Shown here: in pieces, positions 1 to 25,777 of the stretch
How the letters are laid out: the number at the start of each line of letters is the position of its first letter
How positions within the stretch are numbered: the stretch's first letter is position 1
DNA from: Octopus sinensis
Lineage: Eukaryota
Reading direction: 5' to 3'
DNA length: 25,777 bases
Assembly (NCBI RefSeq): GCF_006345805.1
Contig: NW_021835678.1
Location: 1 to 25,777 of the forward strand
Notes under the pieces: model-generated
The model's input: only the letters and a program-made list of their open reading frames with translations
What the model was told of the DNA's origin: nothing
Database searches by the model: none
Position numbers and translations under genes: made by a program

Positions 1-1030
1 ATGGATCAATAGCCGGATTACTGCGTTCCACTTTGAAAGGTATGCGTTTGCAATCCAGGAACAGGAAATATCAACCAAGTTCCTGATGCGCAAAAGCGAT
101 AGAGATGCAGAAAAAGTCGTAAAATGTGACATCCGATGCAAACTTTGGAGTTCAACACTGAAGATATCACCCACATCATAGGAAGCTGTCCGAAAATGTC
201 ATCACGGGTATTATCTACCGATGAGACATGACATTGTAGCTAGGACACTCTATAAAATCCGTCGGAAGGATAATCATGAGGACAAAGAAATAAAAATCCA
301 CAATAGGTGCAGGAGTGGCTGTGTGGTAAGTAGCTTGCTAACCAACCACATGGTTCCGGGTTCAGTCCCACTGCGTGGCATCTTGGGCAAGTGTCTTCTG
401 CTATAGCCCCGGGCCGACCAATGCCTTGTGAGTGGATTTGGTAGACGGAAACTGAAAGAAGCCTGTCGTATATATGTATATATATATATGTATGTGTGTG
501 TGTGTGTGTTTGTGTGTCTGTGTTTGTCCTCCTAGCATTGCTTGACAATTGATGCTGGTGTGTTTACGTCCCCGTCACTTAGCGGTTCGGCAAAAAAGAC
601 CGATAGAATAAGTACTGGGCTTACAAAGAATAAGTCCCCGGGGTCGATTTGCTCGACTAAAGGCGGTGCTCCAGCATGGCCGCAGTCAAATGACTGAAAC
701 AAGTAAAAGAGTAAAAAGACACAATATGGTAGAAGCCATAGCCACACATAATAAAAAGGAATACTGGAGGAATGTCCCAGAGAAGACCTCAATAAAATGT
801 AAGCCCAACAAACCTGATATTATGATTTAGGATAGAGAAGAGAAACTGTGCACAGTTGTGGAAATCGGCTGCCCAGCGGATGTTAACATAAAGCTGAAGA
901 TCAGTGAAAAAGAGAACACCCATGCTGAACTATTGAGAAATCGGCAGTTATTCTAGCCAAATTACAAGTTCAGGTTTATACCAGTAATTATTGGGGCCCT
1001 CGGATATGTAACACACTGCCTAAATACCGA
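1..1030 (+). mobile_element. 3' remnant of an R4/Dong-like non-LTR retrotransposon (CCHC knuckle plus restriction-like endonuclease), decayed and split by a SINE at 306-719
   Basis: Manual translation across frameshifts gives ..RCKL..EDITHIIGSCPKMSS..RHDIVARTLYK.. (about 130-300). After the SINE it gives ..NKPDIMI*DREEKLCTVVEIGCPADVNIKLKISEKEN..FIPVIIGALGYV (about 727-1015). These match the zinc knuckle, RHD motif and PD-(D/E)xK endonuclease of R2/R4-group elements. In-frame stops are present. Confidence 0.85.
306..719 (+). mobile_element. tRNA-derived SINE, family A (octopus OK/OR-like; exact name unverified), full length with 7-bp TSD
   Basis: A box TGGCTGTGTGG (316-326), B box GGTTCAGTCC (359-368), CORE-like CTTGGGCAAGT, central (TA)/(TG)n tract, (AGTAAAAG)n tail. 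CACAATA is duplicated at 299-305 and 720-726. Confidence 0.92.
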
Positions 1031-2687: not shown

Positions 2688-3155
2688 CATGACCGGGCGT
2701 GCACACAGCTCTCCGTTAACCTAAATCTAATCTTTCTTTGTCAGGTTTGTGTTCTCTATATTTTATCGCTTTAATTCTACGTTATACACCCACGGACAAC
2801 TGTAGCCGGTCATAACCAGGACACAACAAACACTAACAACATGCCTAAAGATATTTCAGTATATCTAGCGGGAGGGACATCCCCTTCTTTATGCACCAAA
2901 CTGTACAGATTGATGCAACACAGATGCACAATATCCTACCCATAACGGACAGTTGCTGGATGGGTCGAAACGACCGTCGTACTGAATAAAGAAGACTAGC
3001 GCCAAATCTTTCCGTTTCCTCCATCAATTACGACACTGAAAAATTCCTGAAGCAGATCCAACGGAAATTGACTCTACTGGATGACATCAGGCAGCCGGAA
3101 ACTGTGAACGTGCTTTACTCAACACACTAATTAACACACATAGCCATTAATCCTA

Positions 3156-3527
3156 GGCGCAGGAGTGGCTGTGTGGTAAATAGCTTGCTAACCAACCACA
3201 CGGTTGCGGGTTCAGTCCCACTGCGTGGCATCTTGGGCAAGTGTCTTCTGCTATAGCCCCGGGCCGACCAATGCCTTGTGAGTGGATTTGGTAGACGGAA
3301 ACTGAAAGAAGCCTGTCGTATATATGTATATATATGTATATGTGTGTTTGTGTGTCTGTGTTTGTCCCCCTAGCATGCTTGACAACCGATGCTGGGTGTG
3401 TTTATGTCCCCGTTACTTAGCGGTTCGGCAAAAAGAGACCGATAGAATAAGTACTAAAAGGTGGTGCTCCAGCATGGCCGCAGTCAAATGACTGAAACAA
3501 GTAAAAGAGTATAAAAGAGTAAAAGAG

Positions 3528-4990: not shown

Positions 4991-5069
4991 ATGTAATGGT
5001 AAATAAAGAATACCAAGAAATTTTCCAACTTCCTGTTATGTTATACGTACGTACATATATATATATATG

Positions 5070-6852: not shown

Positions 6853-6897
6853 GAACCTGAAAAGACCCAGACTGATCGGTCGAAACATATGTTGTAC
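6853..6897 (+). ncRNA. Type I hammerhead-like motif, probably inactivated (C3 opposite A8)
   Basis: GAAC-CTGAAAA-GACC[10 nt]GGTC-GAA-ACATATGT-T-GTAC. AATAAA follows at 6900. Confidence 0.55.
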
Positions 6898-7504: not shown

Positions 7505-7552
7505 GTCTCTGATGAATGGATACCTCTTATATTCCTGAAACAGCTGTAAAAC
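7505..7552 (+). ncRNA. Type I hammerhead ribozyme motif, core intact, stems I and II each with one mismatch
   Basis: GTCT-CTGATGA-ATGGATA[CCTCTTA]TATTCCT-GAA-ACAGCTGT-A-AAAC. GUA triplet and palindromic stem III. Confidence 0.65.
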
Positions 7553-8415: not shown

Positions 8416-8717
8416 ATGCATCCATCAATGTTTACTGCTAAAACTCTGTCTCCGCTCTCACCCTAGTACTGTTCCAGCTGCTGTATATGAGGGATGTGTG
8501 GAGGTGAGAAGAGGAGAAAGTTCCATCTTTATGGAATTTCTCTTCCATAAAATTATGGAATCATCCAAAGAACATTTCCAACGAAAAAAAAACGTTGCCT
8601 CTTCCTCAGTTTATTACTTCAAGTTGTGTGATATCGATTACGCTTTCACTGATTATCTGATTGGTTATTGATTATCTGATTGGTTATTGATTTTATGAAA
8701 TTATATGCGAATTACGA

Positions 8718-9131
8718 TCAGGAGTGGCTGTGTGGTAAGTAGCTTGCTAACCAACCACATGGCTCCGGGTTCAGTCCCACTGCGTGGCACCTTGGGCAAG
8801 TGTCTTCTGCTATAGCCCCGGGCCGACCAATGCCTTGTGAGTGGATTTGGTAGACGGAAACTGAAAGAAGCCCGTCGCATATATGTATAATATATATATA
8901 TGTGCGTGTGTGTTTGTGTGTGTGTGTTTGTCTCCCTAGCATTGCTTGACAACCGATGCTGGTGTGTTTATGTCCCCGTTACTTAGCGGTTCGGCAAAAG
9001 AGAGCGATAGAATAAGTACTGGGCTTACAAAAAGAATTAGTCCCGGGGTCGAGTTGCTCGATTAAAGGCGGTGCTCCAGTATGGCCGCAGTCAAATGACT
9101 GAAACAAGTAAAAGAGTAAAAGAGTAAAGAG
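8718..9131 (+). mobile_element. SINE family A, full-length young copy
   Basis: Head, CORE-like motif, central microsatellite and (AGTAAAAG)n tail, closely matching 306-719 and 25071-25480. Confidence 0.9.
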
Positions 9132-9919
9132 AGTGTGTGTGTGTTGTGTATGTATGTACACACACACACACACACGCACGCACACACACACACACACACA
9201 CGCACGCACACACACATAATATGGGTGGCTAATTCGCAATTTTAGAACCTAAAGGCAGAAATATAAACGTCACTAAAGTGATAAAGGGAACTTGTGAGGA
9301 ACAGTATTGCTAGAAATAAGTGTCGAAGCAACTATAAAACTATCATGGCAATACACATACACTGTGTATGTATATTTGATATTGTTTATGTTCCTCGGGC
9401 TGCTTCTCATTCATATGTCTACAAGTATGTATGGCGATTTGTTCCTTTCTTTTCCTTGGGATTTCCTATGATTCCTGTTTCCGAAGAAGAGCTATGTCCG
9501 AAGCGTAACACAACCACTCATTTCCTTCTCTGAGCGTCGTGGTTTTTTCATGTCTTTTTCTCCGTTTTTAAAAAAAAAATTAACTATGTACTGCATGTTC
9601 ACATGTAGTTTCACATGTATTTTCACATGTATGTTTACATGTGTGTGTGTGTGTGTGTGTGTGTAATTTTGTTGCTAAGCTTCAGAAGGAAATATCGAAT
9701 TTAGAATAATTCTTCCACCATTTTTAAAGTTTGTTCTTTGTTTTCGTTATTATTTTTAAGATATAAAGAAGATATTTTACAAAACGGTTTCCGTTTCGAC
9801 CAAGACATCTTGGTTTTATAGAATTACTTTTGGTCGACTCAGTTCTGGTTTCTGGAACTTCGGCCGATTGACAAAAGTGTTCGTGCATCGAATTAAATTC
9901 TGTATTTAACTGTTTATCC

Positions 9920-16017: not shown

Positions 16018-16181
16018 TGACTTGTTTTAGTCATTGGATAGCGGCCATGCTGGGGCACCTACCGCTTGAAGAAGTACTATAGTCGAATGAATCAACTCCA
16101 GGACTTAATTTGTTTCTTACAGCCTAATACTATTTTATCGGTATCTTTTGCAGGGACGCCACCGGTTGTTAAGTGGTGGTG
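16018..16181 (-). mobile_element. SINE family A, degenerate 3' part
   Basis: GACTTGTTTTAGTCATTGGATAGCGGCCATGCTGGGGCACC ... TATCGGTATCTTTTGC ... CGGTTGTTAAGTGGTGG. Confidence 0.7.
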
Positions 16182-16564
16182 GTCCATCACTATAATCCAG
16201 AGAGCAAAGCCCAGTCAATGCAGTGGAAGCACCGTGACTCACCTCCTCCAAAGAAGGCAAGAGTGCAGCCCTCCGCTGGCAAGGTCATGCTCACAGTCTT
16301 CTGGGACCAGGACGGAGTAGTGATGACTGATTTCCTGGCAAAGGGTACCACAATTACAGGAGCCTATTATGCTTCACTTTTGAGGAAATTAAGAGAAGCT
16401 ATCAAAATCAAGAGGCGGGGCAAGAGGAGGTGAGTCACGGTGCTTCCACTGCATTGACTGGGCATTGCTCTCTGGATCATAGTGATGGCCCACCACCACT
16501 TAACAACCGGTGACGTCCCTGCAAAAGATACCGATAAAATAAGTATTAAGCTTTAAGAAACAAA
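16109..16564. repeat. Inverted duplication (about 140-bp arms, 175-bp spacer) spanning the SINE-mariner junction
   Basis: 16109-16248 is the reverse complement of 16424-16564 with a few mismatches and one indel. Confidence 0.92.
16181..16425 (+). pseudogene. Internal fragment of the adjacent mariner transposase (no TIRs), opposite orientation
   Basis: VHHYNPESKAQSMQWKH..KVMLTVFWDQDGVV..KRRGK. About 3 differences in roughly 245 bp from the reverse complement of about 17330-17575. Confidence 0.92.
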
Positions 16565-16831: not shown

Positions 16832-16910
16832 TGTAGTAAGAAGCAGGCTTCCCAACCACAGGGTTCCGGATTCAATCCTACAGCGTGGTACCTTGAGTAC
16901 GTATCTTCTA
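16832..16910 (+). mobile_element. SINE family A, degenerate head, ending at the (TA)n where the mariner is inserted
   Basis: GTAAGAAGCAGGCTTCCCAACCACAGGGTTCCGGATTCAATCC ... GTACCTTGAG ... TCTTCTA. Confidence 0.65.
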
Positions 16911-16929
16911 TATATATATTGTATATATA

Positions 16930-18215
16930 CGAGGGGCGTTCAATATGTAATGCCCCTGACCCACTTCCCATAGCAGTAGAGCAACGAAACTTGGCACAGT
17001 TATTAATCTTTTTCTACATAGGAACCACCCAGAGTTACGCATTTCTCCCATCGTTTGATGCAGCTCTGGAGACCGTTTTTGTAGAAGACCCCCAGCTTGG
17101 TCCTCCAACCATGACGTAACTTCAGAAATCAAGGCTGCATCATCTGGGAAACGCTTTCCTTTCAAAAACAACTTCATGGCTGGGAAGAGGTGAAAATCAG
17201 AGGGTGCAAGGTCAGGAGAGTAGGGGGGTGGGGGAGGAGTTCATAGCCGCACGCCTGTGCTTCTGATCTGGCGACACGCGAGTTGTGGACCAGAGCGTTG
17301 TCCTGCAGGTAGAGGATGTCTTTGCTGATCTTGCCCCGCCTCTTGATTTTGATAGCTTCTCTTAATTTCCTCAAAAGTGAAGCATAATAGGCTCCTGTAA
17401 TTGTGGTACCCTTTGCCAGGAAATCTGTCATCACTACTCCGTCCTGGTCCCAGAAGACTGTGAGCATGACCTTGCCAGCGGAGGGCTGCACTCTTGCCTT
17501 CTTTGGAGGAGGTGAGTCACGGTGCTTCCACTGCATTGACTGGGCTTTGCTCTCTGAATCATAGTGATGGACCCAGGTTTCATCCTGTGTCGTCAGTCTT
17601 TCGAAAAATTTTGACTCTTCTTGGCACATCTCTAAATTCATCCTCGAGCACTCGACGCATTCTTGCTTCTGGAAAGGTGTGAGCAACATGGGAATCCATC
17701 TGGCAGAGACCTTTTGCATATGCAAATGGTTATGAATGATAGTTTCCACAAACCCGGTACTAATCTTGACCTCATGAGCTATTTGGCGAATAGTTATGCG
17801 TCGATCTCCCAAAATGGCAGTCTCAACTTGACGGACAGATGCCTCATCAATGGCAGAGGTGGGACGACCAGATCTGGGAGCTGTTTCCACAGAGTTCCGA
17901 CCATGTTTGAATTCACGATGCCAGCGTTTTACAAGGTCATATGATGGGGCATCATCACCATAAGTTACTTTCATTTCATCAAAAGTCTCCCGTGGTGTGC
18001 GTCCTTTCAAATACAAAAATCGGATCACTGCTCGACACTCAACAGGTTCCATTTCACACTTGACTCAGTTCAAACGCCTGTAAATCAGACACCACAATTA
18101 GTTCAGAGCTGTAATTTGCCACTTAATCTATAGAGATATAAATAATTGCACATGCAAACTTTCAGATCAAACAACTGCAAGTGGGTCAGAGGCATTACTT
18201 ATTGAACGCCCCCCG
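16930..18215 (-). mobile_element. Full-length mariner (Tc1/mariner, D,D34D; irritans/Bytmar-like by motif), 1286 bp
   Basis: 37-bp TIRs CGAGGGGCGTTCAATATGTAATGCCCCTGACCCACTT (16930-16966 and 18179-18215, 3 mismatches). TA TSD at 16928-29 and 18216-17. Confidence 0.95.
17003..18052 (-). pseudogene. Mariner transposase with two compensating frameshifts (about 349 aa when repaired)
   Basis: MEPVECRAVIRFLYLKG, RWIPMLLT, TQDETW, LQDNA and (repaired) HPPYSPDLAPSDFHLF..RWEKCVTLGGSYVEKD*. A 1-bp deletion lies in the homopolymer at 17223-17228 and a 1-bp insertion at 17089-17093. Confidence 0.92.
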
Positions 18216-18246
<31 letters not shown>

Positions 18247-18265
18247 TATATAATATATATATATA

Positions 18266-18307
<42 letters not shown>

Positions 18308-18329
18308 GTATATATATTGTATATATATA

Positions 18330-18385
<56 letters not shown>
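18216..18385. repeat. Imperfect (TA)n microsatellite
   Basis: Direct reading. Confidence 0.95.
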
Positions 18386-18430
18386 GAATAAATAAATAAA
18401 TGGAGTTGAACGAAGATGTTATCAAAATTC

Positions 18431-18521
18431 CTTTACTCTCGACATATGTTTCGAAGACAACATGGCTTTATTCCAAAGGAATAAACGGTGTAAGATGCAA
18501 TCTTCTCATCAGGAAAGAAAG
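18431..18521 (-). ncRNA. Canonical type I hammerhead ribozyme within a 175-bp unit (18386-18560) flanked by TA-rich tracts
   Basis: Minus: stem I CTTTCTTTC / GAGAG-T-AAAG; core CTGATGA (18512-18506); stem II GAAGAT / GTCTTC; GAAA (18452-18449); palindromic stem III ACATATGT; C17 at 18441 (GUC triplet). Confidence 0.82.
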
Positions 18522-18600
18522 GGACCCTCTCTCAACAACAAGACAATTACGACTCTCATCATATATATATTGTATATATATTATACATATATATTATATA

Positions 18601-19784
18601 TGCTTTTTCTCAGCAGTTTCAGCTCAGAGCCGTGGCCATGATGATGCACCGCCGTTTTGCTACACTGTTATTACTGAGAGCCTCCTCCAATATGTGGCAC
18701 TTGGTGAAGAATAGAGTTTGATGTAGCTACTCTCATTTGCACCTCTTGCGTGAGGGAGGTTCATCTGGGACTCTCGACAGGAAGAGGTCCAGTTTTGATT
18801 TGAACTGTATATTATTATCCTCAGCCCATCTGTAAATTGAGTCCAACTCCTGCTGCAGATGTGCAACATCGCTGGGGTTCTGTATTTTCTGCGAGACTTC
18901 GTGTGTCTGCGTAGCTAGCAAGGGTGGCTATCCGGGCAGTTGAGGGCATATCTGAGAGGGCCAGTATGAAAAGCAGTGGTCCCAAGACAGTATCCCGTGG
19001 AACACCGCTCACTATTTGTGTTTTTATTGAGGTGGCTCCATTGGCCACTACTGCCTGACTCCTATCTTTCAGAAAGTAATGTAACCATTCTCCGAGTTTT
19101 CCTGCTATGCCGAGATCACGCAGTTTGTGGCATATCATACCATGATCCACCTTGTCAAAAGCTTTTGCAAAATCAAGGTATATTAGTCCACATTTGATTT
19201 GTTGAATAACTGCCTCAACACCCAGTCATAATGTTTTAAGAGCTGGGTCAGGCAGCTCCTACCTGGTCGAAAGCCACGCTGGGCATCACTTAGCAAGTTA
19301 TTTTCTTCTAGGAATGCGATTAGTTTCCCTCTAACTATCCGTTCCATGACTTTGCTTATGTGTGAAGTCAGAGACAGGCCTATATTTTTTGGTACCTGCT
19401 CTACTCCCCCCTTTATGGATTAGGCATATTATTCCCTCCTTCAGCTTGCTTGGCAGTCTGTCATTTGCAAGAAGACCCTGGAAGAGAATACGGAGAGGTT
19501 TTGCCAGGACACGTTTACACGATTTGAAGAGGATTCTTGGGAAACCATCAGGACCAGCAGTTGAGTTTGTGTCCACTTCATCTATGGCTAGTAGTATATC
19601 TTCTTTGCTAATATCAATGTATTCCATTGTAATTGCCTCGCTGGTTATAGGTGAAGCGGAAAAGAAGTCCATTGGTTCGTTTACTTGTCTGTGTTCCAAC
19701 GGGATGGTAAAGACACTTTTGAACTGGTCATTGAATACGAAGGAGCCATAATACCTCACTGATTTTGGTTGGACTGTCTGAGGG
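18601..19784 (-). mobile_element. CR1-clade LINE (second family): 5'-truncated RT fragment joined by an internal deletion to the 3' end
   Basis: Across frameshifts: QFKSVFT, AGPDGFP, YRPVSLTSHISKVMERIV, GFRPGRSCLTQLL, KAFDKVDHG, GVPRDTVLGPLLF, YAD(D)T, then FKSKLDLFLSRVPDEP..SNSILHQ and a 3' tail. TA-rich sequence lies on both sides. Confidence 0.9.
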
Positions 19785-20765: not shown

Positions 20766-20939
20766 AAGTGGCTGCGTGGGAAGTAGCTTGCTTACCAACC
20801 ACATGGTTCCGGGTTCAATCCCACTGTACGGCACCTTAGCCAAGTGTCTTCTACTATAGCATCGGGTCGACCAAAGCCTTGTGAGTGGATTTGGTAGACG
20901 GAAACTGAAAAAAGCCCGTCGTATATATATATATATATA

Positions 20940-20982
<43 letters not shown>

Positions 20983-21160: not shown

Positions 21161-21401
21161 TATATGATATATATATATATATATATATATAATGTATTTA
21201 TATAATGTATGTAATGTATGTAGCGACATTTCCTCTCATAGATTCCGGATGAATTGTAGTTACTATCGATTAATCTAGAAACTGATCAAACTCCATATCG
21301 GAATTACAGATCAATATAGTATAGACACGTCGCCAATAATTCTTGATTAGGTCAGCTTTTAGAATGGCAAGTTAACTTACTCGACGCACCTGGCGTATGT
21401 A

Positions 21402-21775
21402 CTCTTTTACTTGTTTCAGTCATTTGACTGCGGCCATGCTGGAGCACCGCCTTTAATCGAGCAACTCGACCCCGGGACTTATTCTTTTGTAAGCCCAGTA
21501 CTTATTCAATCGGTCTCTTATGCCGAACCGCGAAGTGACGGGGACGTAAACACACCAGCATCGGTTGTCAAACAATGCTAGGGGACAAATACAGACACAC
21601 AAACACACACACATACATACATATATATATACATATATACGAGGGGCTTCTTTCAGTTTCCGTCTACCAAATCCACTCACAAGGCTTTGGTCGGCCCGAG
21701 GCTATAGTAGAAGACACTTTCCCAAGGTGCCACGCAGTGGGACTGAACCCGGAACCATGAGGCTGGTAAACAAGA
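21402..21775 (-). mobile_element. SINE family A, lacking about the first 25 nt
   Basis: From the tail CTCTTTTACTTGTTTCAGTC to GGAACCATGAGGCTGGTAAACAAG. Confidence 0.88.
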
Positions 21776-23110: not shown

Positions 23111-23146
<36 letters not shown>

Positions 23147-23275
23147 CAAGCTTATTTCAGTTTCTGTCTACCAAATCCACTCACAAGGCTTTGGTCACCC
23201 TGAGGCTATAGCAGAAGACAATTGCCCAGGGTGCCACACAGTGAGACTGAACCCAGAACCATGTGGTTGGAAAGC
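22706..23275 (-). mobile_element. SINE family A, older copy in two pieces (22706-22950 and 23145-23275)
   Basis: The 3' half and 5' half flank about 190 bp of unrelated sequence plus (TA)n. Confidence 0.65.
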
Positions 23276-24180: not shown

Positions 24181-24778
24181 CCATCCAAGAGGGGTGGGCA
24201 TATTTGGACACATATCACAAACTGATTTCATTTTTTGCTTCTTTCCTTTTTTTTCGTTTCATTCTTCTTTCCATCTCTCTTGTACTCAACCACTTACGGG
24301 TTCCCCCACTCACACCCTCACCCACACAGCCATCCAAGAGGGGTGGGCATATTTGGACACATATCACAAACTGATTTCATTTTTTGCTTCTTTCCTTTTT
24401 TTTCGTTTCATTCTTCTTTCCATCTCTCTTGTACTCAACCACTTACGGGTTCCCCCACTCACACCCTCACCCACACAGCCATCCAAGAGGGGTGGGCATA
24501 TTTGGACACATATCACAAACTGATTTCATTTTTTGCTTCTTTCCTTTTTTTTCGTTTCATTCTTCTTTCCATCTCTCTTGTACTCAACCACTTACGGGTT
24601 CCCCCACTCACACCCTCACCCACACAGCCATCCAAGAGGGGTGGGCATATTTGGACACATATCACAAACTGATTTCATTTTTTGCTTCTTTCCTTTTTTT
24701 TCGTTTCATTCTTCTTTCCATCTCTCTTGTACTCAACCACTTACGGGTTCCCCCACTCACACCCTCACCCACACAGCC
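24181..24778. repeat. Tandem array, 4 apparently identical 149-bp units
   Basis: CCATCCAAGAGG starts at 24181, 24330, 24479 and 24628. The internal T8 run has the same length in all units. Confidence 0.95.
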
Positions 24779-25070
24779 TTCCTTCTTTCTTTCTTTCTTT
24801 CTTTCTTTCTCCATCACCATTTCTTCCTCAAACCAATCATTTATTCCTCATCAGCACAACTTCCTCTTCACGCTCTTCCAAACCGTTTTCTTCTTAAATT
24901 CTTTCATTTCTCACATTTTACTTTTGTCATCCAATAATCTGCTGCCGAGGTCACGTGAACACATTACATACAACTCTAGTCTCGCACCAATTCTGATTCA
25001 TTCCTGCGCGCATGCGTACAACACTTGCAGTAACTAACATGTCACAGACAAAAATAATGCTTTAGTTGTC

Positions 25071-25480
25071 TCTTTACTCTTTTTCTCTTTTACTTGTTTC
25101 AGTCATTTGACTGTGGCCATGCTGGAGCACCGCCTTTAATCGAGCAACTCGACCCCGGGACTTATTCTTTAGTAAGCCCAGTACTTATTCTATCGGTCTC
25201 TTTTGCCGAACCGCTAAGTTACGGGGACATAAACACACCAGCATTGGTTGTCAAGCAATGCTAGGGGGACAAACACAAACATATACACACACACCCATAC
25301 ATATATATACATATATACGACAGGCTTCTTTCAGTTTCCGTCTACCAAATCCACTCACAGGGCATTGGTCGGCCCGGGGCTATAGCAGAAGACACTTGCC
25401 CAAGATGCCACGCAGTGGGACTGAACCCGGAACCATGTGGCTGGTTAGCAAGCTACTTACCACACAGCCACTCCTGCGCC
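25071..25480 (-). mobile_element. SINE family A, full-length young copy
   Basis: Head ends ..CTCCTGCGCC at 25480. Candidate 8-bp TSD TAGTTGTC (25063-70) / TATTTGTC (25481-88). Confidence 0.92.
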
Positions 25481-25777
25481 TATTTGTCATGACAATACTT
25501 CATTTTTTTTTTGTCTTGCAATTTATTTTATTTTTTAAGTCACACTTCAAAATCATTGGTGAAAAAAAACCCTTCGAGTATATTTGGTTTTAAGGGTCTG
25601 GACCACGTGGTTTCTGAATAAGACACACAAATGCACGCACACAACACTGGACCCATTTGAGGTTGCTTCCTTTTCCCTTTGTTCTTTTAAGATCATCTCT
25701 CAGCCTTTATCAACACTACACTTTCCCTCTTCCTTTTTTGTAACTCTGACTCTCCCTCTCTCTCTCTTTCTCTCTCT

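What the first reader, a model, noticed from the sequence alone, without database searches (positions are those of the whole stretch)
18431..18521. Fully canonical hammerhead ribozyme in a 175-bp TA-flanked unit
All conserved core nucleotides are present on the minus strand: C3-U4-G5-A6-U7-G8-A9, the G10.1-C11.1 pair, G12-A13-A14, the A15.1-U16.1 pair and C17. Cleavage is predicted between 18441 and 18440. Stem I has 9 bp with a 1-nt bulge. Stem II has 6 bp and extends into an unusually long arm with a further 4 bp and an 8-bp hairpin (TTTATTCC-TTT-GGAATAAA, 18485-18467). Stem III is the palindrome ACAUAUGU, the arrangement known from dimer-acting PLE and retrozyme hammerheads. The unit (18386-18560) has no ORF and lies between the mariner and the LINE tail. 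It could be a solo PLE terminal repeat or a retrozyme-like monomer, and it would cut any minus-strand transcript crossing it. An alternative hairpin (AAGAU-UGC-AUCUU) could compete with stem II.
Basis: partly seen in the sequence, partly recalled or inferred. Interest (0 to 1): 0.85.

Follow-up and report, generated by a model that had tools for sequence, protein, structure and literature searches.

The report
Solo hammerhead ribozyme relic in octopus DNA
A complete self-cleaving hammerhead RNA motif really is encoded here, most likely as a stranded fragment of a ribozyme-carrying jumping gene that landed in a TA repeat of an octopus-like genome; this kind of element is already well known in animals.

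Summary
The motif is real. On the minus strand, 18522-18430 spells a type I hammerhead with every core nucleotide, G10.1-C11.1, A15.1-U16.1 and C17. Cleavage is predicted between 18441 and 18440. It is the only such motif in the window, and none as good appeared in 600 Mb of random sequence.

Rfam does not detect it. The likely reason is a 53-nt helix II and a loop-less 8-nt palindromic helix III.

LINE and SINE matches place the window in an Octopus-like genome. One 22-kb Octopus sinensis locus, fetched for its LINE and not for any ribozyme, holds two more hammerheads of the same build. They also sit between microsatellites. All 13 compared pairs are kept and 6 differ on both sides.

The 175-bp unit lies inside a TA microsatellite, between the (TA)n tail of a LINE and a mariner. 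It is not part of the LINE. The best reading is a solo fragment of a Penelope-like-element or retrozyme-type retroelement. Those elements carry dimer-acting type I hammerheads and prefer (TA)n targets.

No tandem partner, Penelope-like ORF or homologous copy of the unit was found. Cleavage was not tested.

This is a new member of a known kind, of modest interest.

The parts
18430..18522 (-). Type I hammerhead ribozyme motif. Stem I 5' strand is 18522-18513. Core C3-A9 is 18512-18506. The helix II arm is 18505-18453. G12-A14 is 18452-18450. The helix III palindrome ACAUAUGU is 18449-18442. C17 is 18441. Stem I 3' strand is 18440-18430. The predicted cut lies between 18441 and 18440.
   Evidence: Sequence; descriptor scan; nulls; folding.
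18453..18505 (-). Unusually long helix II: a 6-bp basal stem (GAAGAU/GUCUUC), a 4-bp extension and an 8-bp distal hairpin (18485-18467).
   Evidence: RNAfold of the arm alone gives -12.3 kcal/mol. Pair probabilities are about 0.9 for the basal stem and 0.7-1.0 for the distal hairpin.
18386..18560 (-). 175-bp non-TA unit carrying the hammerhead, 36% G+C. It has 38 nt upstream of stem I and 44 nt downstream, and ends in (ATTT)3. Read as a solo fragment of a retroelement of the Penelope-like-element/retrozyme type.
   Evidence: Boundaries. No second copy in the window or in the six other eukaryotic loci then held, 86 kb of them octopod. G+C.
18216..18385 (.). (TA)n microsatellite, about 85 units, downstream of the unit on the ribozyme strand. 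It continues as about 22 bp of TA-rich DNA to the left of the mariner (about 16908-16929).
   Evidence: Tandem Repeats Finder; sequence.
18561..18602 (-). TA-rich 42-bp stretch upstream of the unit. It is the 3' tail of the LINE: the closest LINE relative also ends in a (TA)n-rich tail of about 45 bp right after the conserved 3'UTR motif.
   Evidence: Alignment A3 of four LINE 3' ends.
18603..19760 (-). Degenerate jockey/CR1-like LINE with frameshifts and an internal deletion of about 600 bp. Its true ORF2 C-terminus (VPDEP) starts at 18771. The 3'UTR motif GGTGCAnCAnCATGGCCACnGC...CTGAAA lies at about 18651-18614. This is a neighbour of the ribozyme unit, not part of it.
16920..18218 (-). Mariner transposon inserted into the same TA microsatellite. 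This is a neighbour of the ribozyme unit, not part of it.
   Evidence: Pfam Transposase_1 and HTH_48; blastn extent against L001 and L002; terminal repeats visible.

Best explanation
The 175-bp unit is a solo, probably 5'-truncated, copy of a hammerhead-carrying retroelement. It belongs to the lineage of Penelope-like elements (PLEs) and animal non-LTR retrozymes, and it inserted into a TA microsatellite of an Octopus-like genome.

The proposed mechanism is inferred from the families, not shown here:
1. In its parent element the motif is transcribed on what is the minus strand here.
2. It folds into a type I hammerhead and cuts its own RNA after C17, leaving a 2',3'-cyclic phosphate and a 5'-OH.
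3. In cis, helix III is only two base pairs plus the self-complementary loop AUAU. Efficient cleavage is therefore expected when two copies, in tandem units or in two transcripts, pair their ACAUAUGU stretches into an 8-bp intermolecular helix III (a double hammerhead).
4. This trims multimeric element RNA to unit length, for circularisation or reverse transcription.

At this locus there is a single copy with no partner and no element promoter or ORF. The ribozyme is therefore most likely an intact but idle relic. At best it would give slow or partial cleavage of read-through minus-strand transcripts.
For: Shown:
- The core and all three helices are complete.
- Chance is very unlikely: 0 of 1500 random windows, 0 in 600 Mb, and 0 of 61 core-matching metagenome sequences have the stems.
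- LINE relatives in Argonauta hians and Octopus sinensis, and SINE copies 80-95% identical to O. sinensis, place the window in an octopodid genome.
- O. sinensis locus L003 holds two hammerheads of the same build. They have CUGAGGA, a 60-nt helix II arm, the palindrome ACGUACGU and a 6-7-bp stem I. They lie in a 372-bp inverted repeat flanked by CA/TA microsatellites.
- Between the window motif and the L003 motif, 13 of 13 compared pairs are kept. Six are changed on both sides, including the inner helix III pair A-U to G-C, which keeps the palindrome.
- RNAcofold predicts the double hammerhead with an intermolecular 8-bp helix III, at -52.2 against 2 x -22.4 kcal/mol.
- The unit lies within a TA microsatellite.

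From the literature:
- Metazoan type I hammerheads have a helix III of 1-2 bp plus a 2-4-nt palindromic loop and act as dimers. PLE hammerheads have an enlarged helix II and a conserved G10.1-C11.1 pair, and most occur as single, widespread, truncated copies (PMC4209133).
- PLEs show (TA)n insertion bias, 5' truncation and tandem or inverted copies, with the hammerhead near the 3' end (PMC8557442).
- Retrozyme units are about 170-400 nt and of low G+C (PMC7229834).
- Solo retrozyme monomers exist, and retrozymes derive from PLE pseudo-LTRs (bioRxiv 10.64898/2026.07.22.740005).
- Octopus vulgaris carries PLE families (PMC13282606).
Against: - No Rfam hammerhead model matches, even at E <= 10. 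The same is true of the O. sinensis copies, so this reflects the architecture and says nothing either way about this copy.
- No PLE ORF (RT plus GIY-YIG) adjoins the unit. The only RT nearby is a LINE, and the RT near the L003 copies is also LINE-like.
- There is no tandem partner.
- No homologous copy of the 175-bp unit was found in the six other eukaryotic loci then held (86 kb of them octopod), among 5.8 billion proteins searched with its six-frame translation, or among 1.84 billion representatives.
- The window motif and the L003 motif share architecture but have no alignable sequence outside the core. The pair comparison is therefore between two descriptor-selected motifs, not true homologues.
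- The PLE-typical extra nucleotide between A9 and G10.1 is absent.
- The 175-nt unit is not unusually structured (z = -0.94). Its MFE fold sequesters the stem I 5' strand and the core. Hammerhead-competent states make up about 3.5e-5 of the ensemble in a model that ignores tertiary contacts.
- Cleavage was not tested.
Confidence: 0.72

Rival explanations
1. It is a monomer of a still-active non-LTR retrozyme family. Tandem arrays elsewhere in the genome would be transcribed, self-cleaved and ligated into roughly 175-nt circular RNAs. This copy would be one of their dispersed integration products.
For: The unit is 175 bp at 36% G+C, within the reported 170-400 nt, low-G+C range. A helix III of 2 bp plus a palindromic tetraloop is the invertebrate retrozyme type (PMC7229834). 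Solo monomers are a recognised class (bioRxiv 10.64898/2026.07.22.740005). The ribozyme is fully intact.
Against: There is no tandem repeat here. No other copy was found in the six other eukaryotic loci then held, 86 kb of them octopod, or among predicted proteins. The unit is not highly self-paired (z = -0.94). Canonical retrozyme hammerheads have a helix II of about 4 bp with loop 1-loop 2 contacts, not a 53-nt arm.
Confidence: 0.15
2. It is a chance match to the hammerhead consensus in AT-rich, repeat-rich DNA.
For: There is a single copy with no detectable homologue. Rfam is silent. The fold z-score is only about -1. Loose hammerhead-like matches do occur at about 0.4 per Mb in random sequence.
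Against: No match as good was seen in 600 Mb of random sequence or in 1500 random windows. None of the 61 metagenome sequences carrying the core letters and the palindrome has the stems. The same unusual architecture recurs in O. sinensis with different stem sequences. Three good motifs were found in 112 kb of octopod DNA, against one poor match in 379 kb of other DNA.
Confidence: 0.04
3. The unit belongs to the neighbouring LINE, either as a ribozyme in its 3'UTR or as a 3' transduction carried along by it.
For: It has the same orientation as the LINE and begins only 42 bp after the LINE's 3'UTR motif. Ribozymes are known in other non-LTR elements (HDV-like ribozymes, cited in PMC4209133).
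Against: Three other copies of this LINE family (L069, L003, L006) share the 3'UTR motif. After their short tails they continue into unrelated DNA with no hammerhead. The closest copy ends in its own (TA)n tail, so 18561-18602 is the LINE's end. The unit's 3' end shows no similarity to the LINE's 3' end.
Confidence: 0.03
4. It is a host-exapted ribozyme with a role in processing a cellular transcript, like the conserved intronic hammerheads of amniotes.
For: The motif is intact although the surrounding elements are decayed.
Against: No gene was recognised anywhere in the 25.8-kb window. It holds only transposons, SINEs and microsatellites. Orthologous conservation could not be examined.
Confidence: 0.03

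Closest known systems
Hammerheads of Penelope-like elements (min-HHR and palindromic-helix-III variants; Cervera & de la Pena 2014, PMC4209133)
   Same: Type I topology and a conserved G10.1-C11.1 pair. Helix II is enlarged (6 bp or more). Helix III is short and palindromic, which implies action as a dimer. Most genomic copies are single, dispersed and truncated. The host elements prefer (TA)n targets and form inverted or tandem partial copies (PMC8557442), as seen at the O. sinensis locus.
   Different: No RT/GIY-YIG ORF or pseudo-LTR context is present here. There is no extra nucleotide between A9 and G10.1. Helix II is a 53-nt three-segment arm, not 7-8 bp plus a loop. Stem I is long (10 bp) rather than 4-5 bp.
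Animal non-LTR retrozymes with canonical type I hammerheads (Cervera & de la Pena 2020, PMC7229834)
   Same: Unit size (175 bp) and low G+C (36%). Helix III is 2 bp plus a palindromic tetraloop, as in invertebrate retrozymes. The unit is non-coding.
   Different: It is not in tandem. Helix II is not the 4-bp type and no loop 1-loop 2 contacts can be recognised. The unit RNA is not highly self-paired.
Rfam Hammerhead_1 (RF00163) and the other Rfam hammerhead models
   Same: The catalytic core letters and the three-helix junction.
   Different: It scores below E = 10 against every Rfam model. The likely reason is that the long helix II insertion and the loop-less helix III are outside what the models allow. 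The O. sinensis copies are also missed.
Naiad PLEs with an 'HHR_half_core' (Craig et al. 2021, PMC8557442)
   Same: (TA)n target preference. Naiad remnants are reported in Octopus. The two halves of the core are separated by 35-50 nt in some Naiad 3'UTRs, similar to the 53-nt spacing here.
   Different: Naiads are described as lacking canonical hammerheads. No Naiad ORF is present here. The link is only a lead from the text and was not tested.

Membership tests
Hammerhead ribozyme (type I) | Conserved core C3 U4 G5 A6 N7 G8 A9, G12 A13 A14, and H17 at the cleavage site | tested here: met
   CUGAUGA, GAA and C17 are at 18512-18506, 18452-18450 and 18441.
Hammerhead ribozyme (type I) | Three helices around the core, with the G10.1-C11.1 and A15.1-U16.1 pairs, helix I open | tested here: met
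   Stem I has 10 bp with one bulge, stem II has 6 bp plus an extension, and helix III is a 4-bp palindrome.
Hammerhead ribozyme (type I) | Match to a curated covariance model (Rfam hammerhead families) | tested here: not met
   No hammerhead hit at gathering score or at E <= 10. The O. sinensis motifs of the same architecture are also missed.
Hammerhead ribozyme (type I) | Core and helices conserved, with covariation, in related sequences | tested here: inconclusive
   No true homologue of the unit was found. Two O. sinensis motifs of the same build keep 13 of 13 pairs, 6 changed on both sides. Both sequences were picked by a pairing descriptor.
Hammerhead ribozyme (type I) | Loop 1-loop 2 tertiary contacts that give fast cleavage at physiological Mg2+ | not tested
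   The bulged U in stem I and the internal loops of the long helix II could contact each other. Nothing was modelled.
Hammerhead ribozyme (type I) | Site-specific self-cleavage | not testable with these tools
   Needs in vitro transcription, or mapping of RNA ends.
PLE pseudo-LTR hammerhead | Lies in a repeat flanking an RT plus GIY-YIG ORF | tested here: not met
   The neighbouring ORFs are a LINE RT and a mariner transposase. Most genomic PLE hammerheads are reported as solo copies (PMC4209133), so this does not exclude descent from a PLE.
PLE pseudo-LTR hammerhead | Minimal or palindromic helix III (dimer design) and enlarged helix II | tested here: met
   ACAUAUGU is self-complementary, and the predicted dimer has an intermolecular 8-bp helix. 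Helix II has 6 bp or more.
PLE pseudo-LTR hammerhead | Unpaired nucleotide between A9 and G10.1 | tested here: not met
   G10.1 follows A9 directly and pairs with C11.1.
PLE pseudo-LTR hammerhead | Insertion in microsatellites, (TA)n in particular; 5' truncation; inverted or tandem partial copies | tested here: met
   The unit is embedded in TA repeats. The O. sinensis copies form a 372-bp inverted pair between microsatellites. Target preference is per PMC8557442.
Animal non-LTR retrozyme | Two or more tandem units, each with a type I hammerhead | tested here: not met
   There is a single unit. Tandem Repeats Finder and blastn find no second copy in the window.
Animal non-LTR retrozyme | Unit of about 150-450 bp, low G+C, non-coding | tested here: met
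   175 bp at 36% G+C. There is no ORF on the ribozyme strand.
Animal non-LTR retrozyme | Highly self-paired unit RNA, found as circular RNA | tested here: not met
   The fold z-score is -0.94. Circular RNA cannot be tested here.

The most novel reading that the evidence does not exclude
Octopod genomes may carry an undescribed hammerhead variant. Its marks would be a 50-60-nt helix II arm, an 8-nt self-complementary helix III and no 9/10.1 bulge. Such a variant escapes Rfam and the usual descriptors. It would belong to (TA)n-targeting elements. These could be the 'missing' complete hammerhead of Naiad-type Penelope-like elements, whose core halves were noted 35-50 nt apart. Alternatively they could be a cephalopod retrozyme family producing small circular RNAs.
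Probability: 0.2. Interest if true: 0.55.

Novelty: new member of a known kind. Interest (0 to 1): 0.35.

Why it matters
Hammerhead-bearing retroelements are abundant in many animals, yet no paper in the searched library (Creative Commons PMC papers and bioRxiv) describes them in octopus.

This copy, and the two in O. sinensis, show that octopod genomes hold intact hammerheads that Rfam-based annotation misses because of their long helix II. That has two practical consequences for cephalopod genome annotation:
- Ribozyme counts based on Rfam models may be underestimates.
- 'Unknown' repeats next to TA microsatellites may be relatives of Penelope-like elements or retrozymes.

If tandem arrays of such units exist, they would predict a class of ribozyme-made circular RNAs in cephalopods. 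As a single locus the finding is ordinary and adds nothing new in kind to ribozyme biology.

Tried and rejected
- Rfam at gathering score and at E <= 10 gave only noise hits (mir-297, SNORD15). The same was true for the O. sinensis copies.
- My first pattern search, with a 20-50-nt gap, missed the motif because helix II is 53 nt. Its hits at 7509 and 24794-24854 have no hammerhead stems.
- Exact-product look-ups of three window ORFs found nothing on record.
- The six-frame translation of the unit against 5.8 billion proteins gave no hit at E <= 1.
- The 53-aa antisense ORF against 1.84 billion representatives gave four hits, none a credible homologue. P0149 is a 52-nt tandem repeat read in three frames, without a hammerhead core. 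P0152 is a repeat-containing protein, judged a chance match from its sequence. P0150 and P0151 were not inspected; they are about 1,000-aa proteins matched in 5-6 short stretches.
- An IMG/VR pattern scan gave 0 hits.
- A JGI metagenome scan gave 61 hits, all without stems. They serve only as an empirical null.
- The idea that the unit is the LINE's 3'UTR was rejected by comparing four LINE 3' ends.
- The idea that the unit's 5' edge repeats the cleavage-site sequence (11 of 13 bases) is not significant: 155 of 2000 shuffles do as well.
- The RT ORF near the O. sinensis hammerheads is LINE-like, not from a Penelope-like element.
- A hammerhead-like stretch in Argonauta (L004, minus strand, at 4999) lacks the 10.1-11.1 pair and was not used.
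- Weak hits from the most relaxed descriptor (window 14457, L003 19867) fall within the background rate.
- I did not build a covariance model. Two unrelated sequences whose arms MAFFT misaligns would not give a usable model.

Full report
**1. The observation**

The sequence is 5'-CCUUUCUUUC / CUGAUGA / GAAGAU...GUCUUC / GAA / ACAUAUGU / C / GAGAG-U-AAAGG-3'.

In window coordinates:
- C3-A9 is 18512-18506.
- G10.1 is 18505 and C11.1 is 18453.
- G12-A14 is 18452-18450.
- A15.1 is 18449 and U16.1 is 18442.
- C17 is 18441 and G1.1 is 18440.

The predicted scissile bond is therefore between 18441 and 18440, as stated. Stem II has 6 bp and continues into a 4-bp segment and an 8-bp hairpin. The open helix is helix I, so the topology is type I.

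**2. Is it more than chance?**

I wrote a descriptor requiring CUGANGA, GAAA, H17 and paired stems. It finds exactly one hit in the 25.8-kb window, and it is this one.

Three null tests followed:
- 1500 random windows from a first-order Markov model of the window gave 11 loose hits (I >= 4, II >= 3, III >= 3) and none as good as the observed motif.
- 600 Mb of composition-matched random sequence gave 229 loose hits and none as good.
- A scan of JGI metagenome contigs for CTGANGAG-N40-70-CGAAACRTAYGTC returned 61 sequences. None combines stem I >= 4 with stem II >= 4.

The base-paired context is therefore not what random DNA supplies around these letters.

**3. What standard tools say**

Rfam (4227 models) reports no hammerhead at gathering score, nor at E <= 10 on a 291-nt slice. 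It also misses the two O. sinensis hammerheads described below. I attribute this to the architecture: a 53-60-nt insertion in helix II and a helix III with no loop. It is not evidence against this particular copy. I could not re-score a shortened version to prove the point.

RNAfold of the isolated motif forms stems I and II and the distal hairpin, but its energy is unremarkable (z = -1.0). In the isolated 93-nt motif:
- stem II pairs have probability about 0.9;
- stem I pairs have probability 0.96-0.98;

In the full 175-nt unit a different competitor wins. The stem I 5' strand pairs with upstream AGAGAGGG, and the core is sequestered. The best hammerhead-competent fold lies 4.4 kcal/mol above the MFE. 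Such states make up about 3.5e-5 of the ensemble, in a model that ignores tertiary stabilisation and co-transcriptional folding.

**4. Surroundings**

- Mariner: 16920-18218 is a mariner (Pfam Transposase_1 and HTH_48). Its extent comes from blastn against two related copies. It lies inside a TA microsatellite whose main block is 18216-18385, with about 22 bp of TA-rich DNA also to the left of the mariner.
- LINE: upstream on the ribozyme strand, 19760 to about 18603 is a frameshifted jockey/CR1-like LINE. Its best named relatives are from Argonauta hians and Octopus sinensis.
- Internal deletion: comparison with fuller relatives shows the window copy lacks about 600 bp internally. RT motif '...NNIQF' is joined to the ORF2 C-terminus 'KSKLDLFLSRVPDEP'.
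- LINE 3' end: this is marked by a conserved 3'UTR motif, GGTGCAnCAnCATGGCCACnGC...CTGAAA, shared by four copies. After it, the closest relative (L069) has a (TA)n-rich tail of about 45 bp and then unrelated DNA. L003 and L006 also run into unrelated DNA.
- Consequence: 18561-18602 is the LINE's own tail, and the hammerhead unit is not part of the LINE.
- Host genome: the dispersed SINE-like repeats of the window match an O. sinensis locus at 80-95% identity. The window therefore comes from Octopus or a close relative.

**5. Related sequences**

The decisive lead came from L003, a 22-kb piece of O. sinensis chromosome CM016866.1. It was fetched only because it carries a LINE relative. The descriptor found two hammerheads there, on opposite strands. 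Each reads CCUACG / CUGAGGA / GGAA...(60-nt arm)...UUCC / GAA / ACGUACGU / C / CGUAGG.

The build is the same as in the window. It has a direct G10.1-C11.1 pair, a very long imperfect helix II arm, an 8-nt self-complementary helix III and a solid stem I. The stem sequences are entirely different.

On an alignment trimmed to the proximal helices, 13 of 13 pairs are standard in both sequences and 6 differ on both sides. Sliding the 3' partners by 1-3 columns drops pairing to 25-50%. One of the six is the inner helix III pair, A-U to G-C, which turns ACAUAUGU into ACGUACGU and keeps the self-complementarity. In cis those positions would be loop nucleotides, so keeping them self-complementary makes sense only if helix III forms between two molecules. 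The search that found the L003 motifs required only 2 helix III pairs, so the full palindrome was not imposed. The stems I and II were partly imposed by the descriptor, which limits the weight of the other five pairs.

The L003 copies lie in a 372-bp inverted repeat (17406-17774 and 17975-18345, 98.7% identity). They sit between CA/TA microsatellites.

Other DNA (379 kb) gives one poor match.

I found no sequence homologue of the 175-bp unit itself:
- none in the window;
- none in the six other eukaryotic loci then held, 86 kb of them octopod;
- none among predicted proteins searched with its translations. Two of the four hits were inspected and proved artefacts; the other two were not inspected.

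**6. Mechanism**

RNAcofold of two copies predicts the classic double hammerhead, with an intermolecular 8-bp helix III and intact helices I and II. The energy is -52.2 kcal/mol against -44.8 for two monomers. The O. sinensis motif behaves the same way.

The literature describes exactly this design:
- Metazoan type I hammerheads have a helix III of 1-2 bp capped by a 2-4-nt palindromic loop and work as dimers in tandem transcripts.
- Hammerheads of Penelope-like elements have an enlarged helix II and a conserved G10.1-C11.1 pair. They mostly occur as single, widespread copies that are probably truncated elements, and they show low activity in vitro (PMC4209133).
- Invertebrate retrozyme hammerheads have 2 bp plus a tetraloop and cleave at 0.1-0.8 per min as monomers (PMC7229834).

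I therefore infer the following. In the parent element the motif trims multimeric RNA to unit length. At this solo locus it is an intact but probably idle relic.

**7. What element?**

Penelope-like elements insert preferentially in microsatellites, (TA)n in particular. They are heavily 5'-truncated, form tandem or inverted partial copies, and carry the hammerhead near the 3' end (PMC8557442). Octopus vulgaris has Penelope-like families (PMC13282606). Animal retrozymes are now argued to derive from the pseudo-LTRs of these elements, and they include solo monomers (bioRxiv 10.64898/2026.07.22.740005).

The TA embedding of the window unit and the inverted, microsatellite-flanked pair in O. sinensis fit this picture. 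However:
- no RT/GIY-YIG ORF adjoins either locus;
- there is no tandem array;
- the unit RNA is not rod-like.

I therefore file it under the Penelope-like-element/retrozyme lineage by analogy, at about 0.7 confidence. I cannot choose firmly between 'truncated 3' end of a Penelope-like element' and 'retrozyme monomer'.

**8. Novelty and score**

Hammerheads in animal retroelements are well known and can number thousands to more than 100,000 per genome. The searched library (Creative Commons PMC papers and bioRxiv) holds no paper describing them in octopus. The 50-60-nt helix II arm, which hides them from Rfam, is a modest new twist seen in two unrelated octopod families.

The most novel reading not excluded is that these are the full hammerheads of Naiad-type, (TA)n-targeting Penelope-like elements, or of a cephalopod retrozyme family. 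In Naiads only 'half cores' 35-50 nt apart were noted (PMC8557442).

The classification is new member of a known kind, with interest 0.35.

Noticed in passing
window 16920-18218: The mariner has a 292-aa ORF (17174-18052, minus strand); relatives are about 350 aa. Its DNA is 89-92% identical to copies in the mantis shrimp Oratosquilla oratoria (L001) and in an ENA contig (L002). The rest of the window is octopod-like. This suggests horizontal transfer among marine invertebrates.
   Followed up: partly
window 16131-16541: A palindromic, rearranged mariner fragment. 16181-16425 is a 99% inverted copy of 17329-17573, and it is bracketed by 118-nt inverted arms (16131-16248 and 16424-16541).
   Followed up: no
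window 18603-19760 (minus strand): A jockey/CR1-like LINE with frameshifts and an internal deletion of about 600 bp that joins RT motif 'NNIQF' to the ORF2 C-terminus 'KSKLDLFLSRVPDEP'. Its 3'UTR motif GGTGCAnCAnCATGGCCACnGC...CTGAAA is conserved in O. sinensis, Argonauta hians and an ENA contig. The closest copy also ends in a (TA)n tail.
   Followed up: yes
window 6857-6893 (plus strand): A hammerhead-like stretch, CCUGAAAA-GACC(10 nt)GGUC-GAAACAUAUGU-U. It has the same helix III palindrome as the main motif and a 4-bp helix II, but G8 is A and stem I is weak. It may be a decayed copy of a short-armed hammerhead, and it lies next to a (CA)n repeat.
   Followed up: partly
window 24181-24782: A 149-bp tandem repeat with 4 copies at 99% identity. 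A diverged fifth unit and a (GAAA)n tract follow. It contains no hammerhead.
   Followed up: partly
window 302-716, 3154-3370, 8705-9132, 20767-20975, 21400-21774, 23119-23275, 25080-25484: Many copies, in both orientations, of a SINE-like repeat of about 400 bp. They are 80-95% identical to copies in Octopus sinensis. Most abut microsatellites.
   Followed up: partly
L003 17406-18455 (Octopus sinensis CM016866.1): A hammerhead-bearing 372-bp inverted repeat with a 200-bp centre. An extra 75-80-bp inverted copy of part of the centre lies at 18381-18455. The whole is flanked by CA/TA microsatellites. This complex inverted structure is of the kind described for insertions of Penelope-like elements.
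   Followed up: partly
window 18548-18560 versus 18436-18448 (minus strand): The 5' edge of the unit (AUAUGAUGAGAGU) resembles the stretch across the cleavage site (AUAUGUCGAGAGU) at 11 of 13 positions. That would be expected for a more-than-unit-length copy, but 155 of 2000 shuffles score as well.
   Followed up: yes
window 18524-18534 with 18515-18523 (minus strand): In the full unit, upstream AGAGAGGG can pair with the stem I 5' strand CCCUUUCU. The resulting alternative fold is 4.4 kcal/mol more stable than the hammerhead-competent fold. It could act as a switch or simply inactivate the solo copy.
   Followed up: partly
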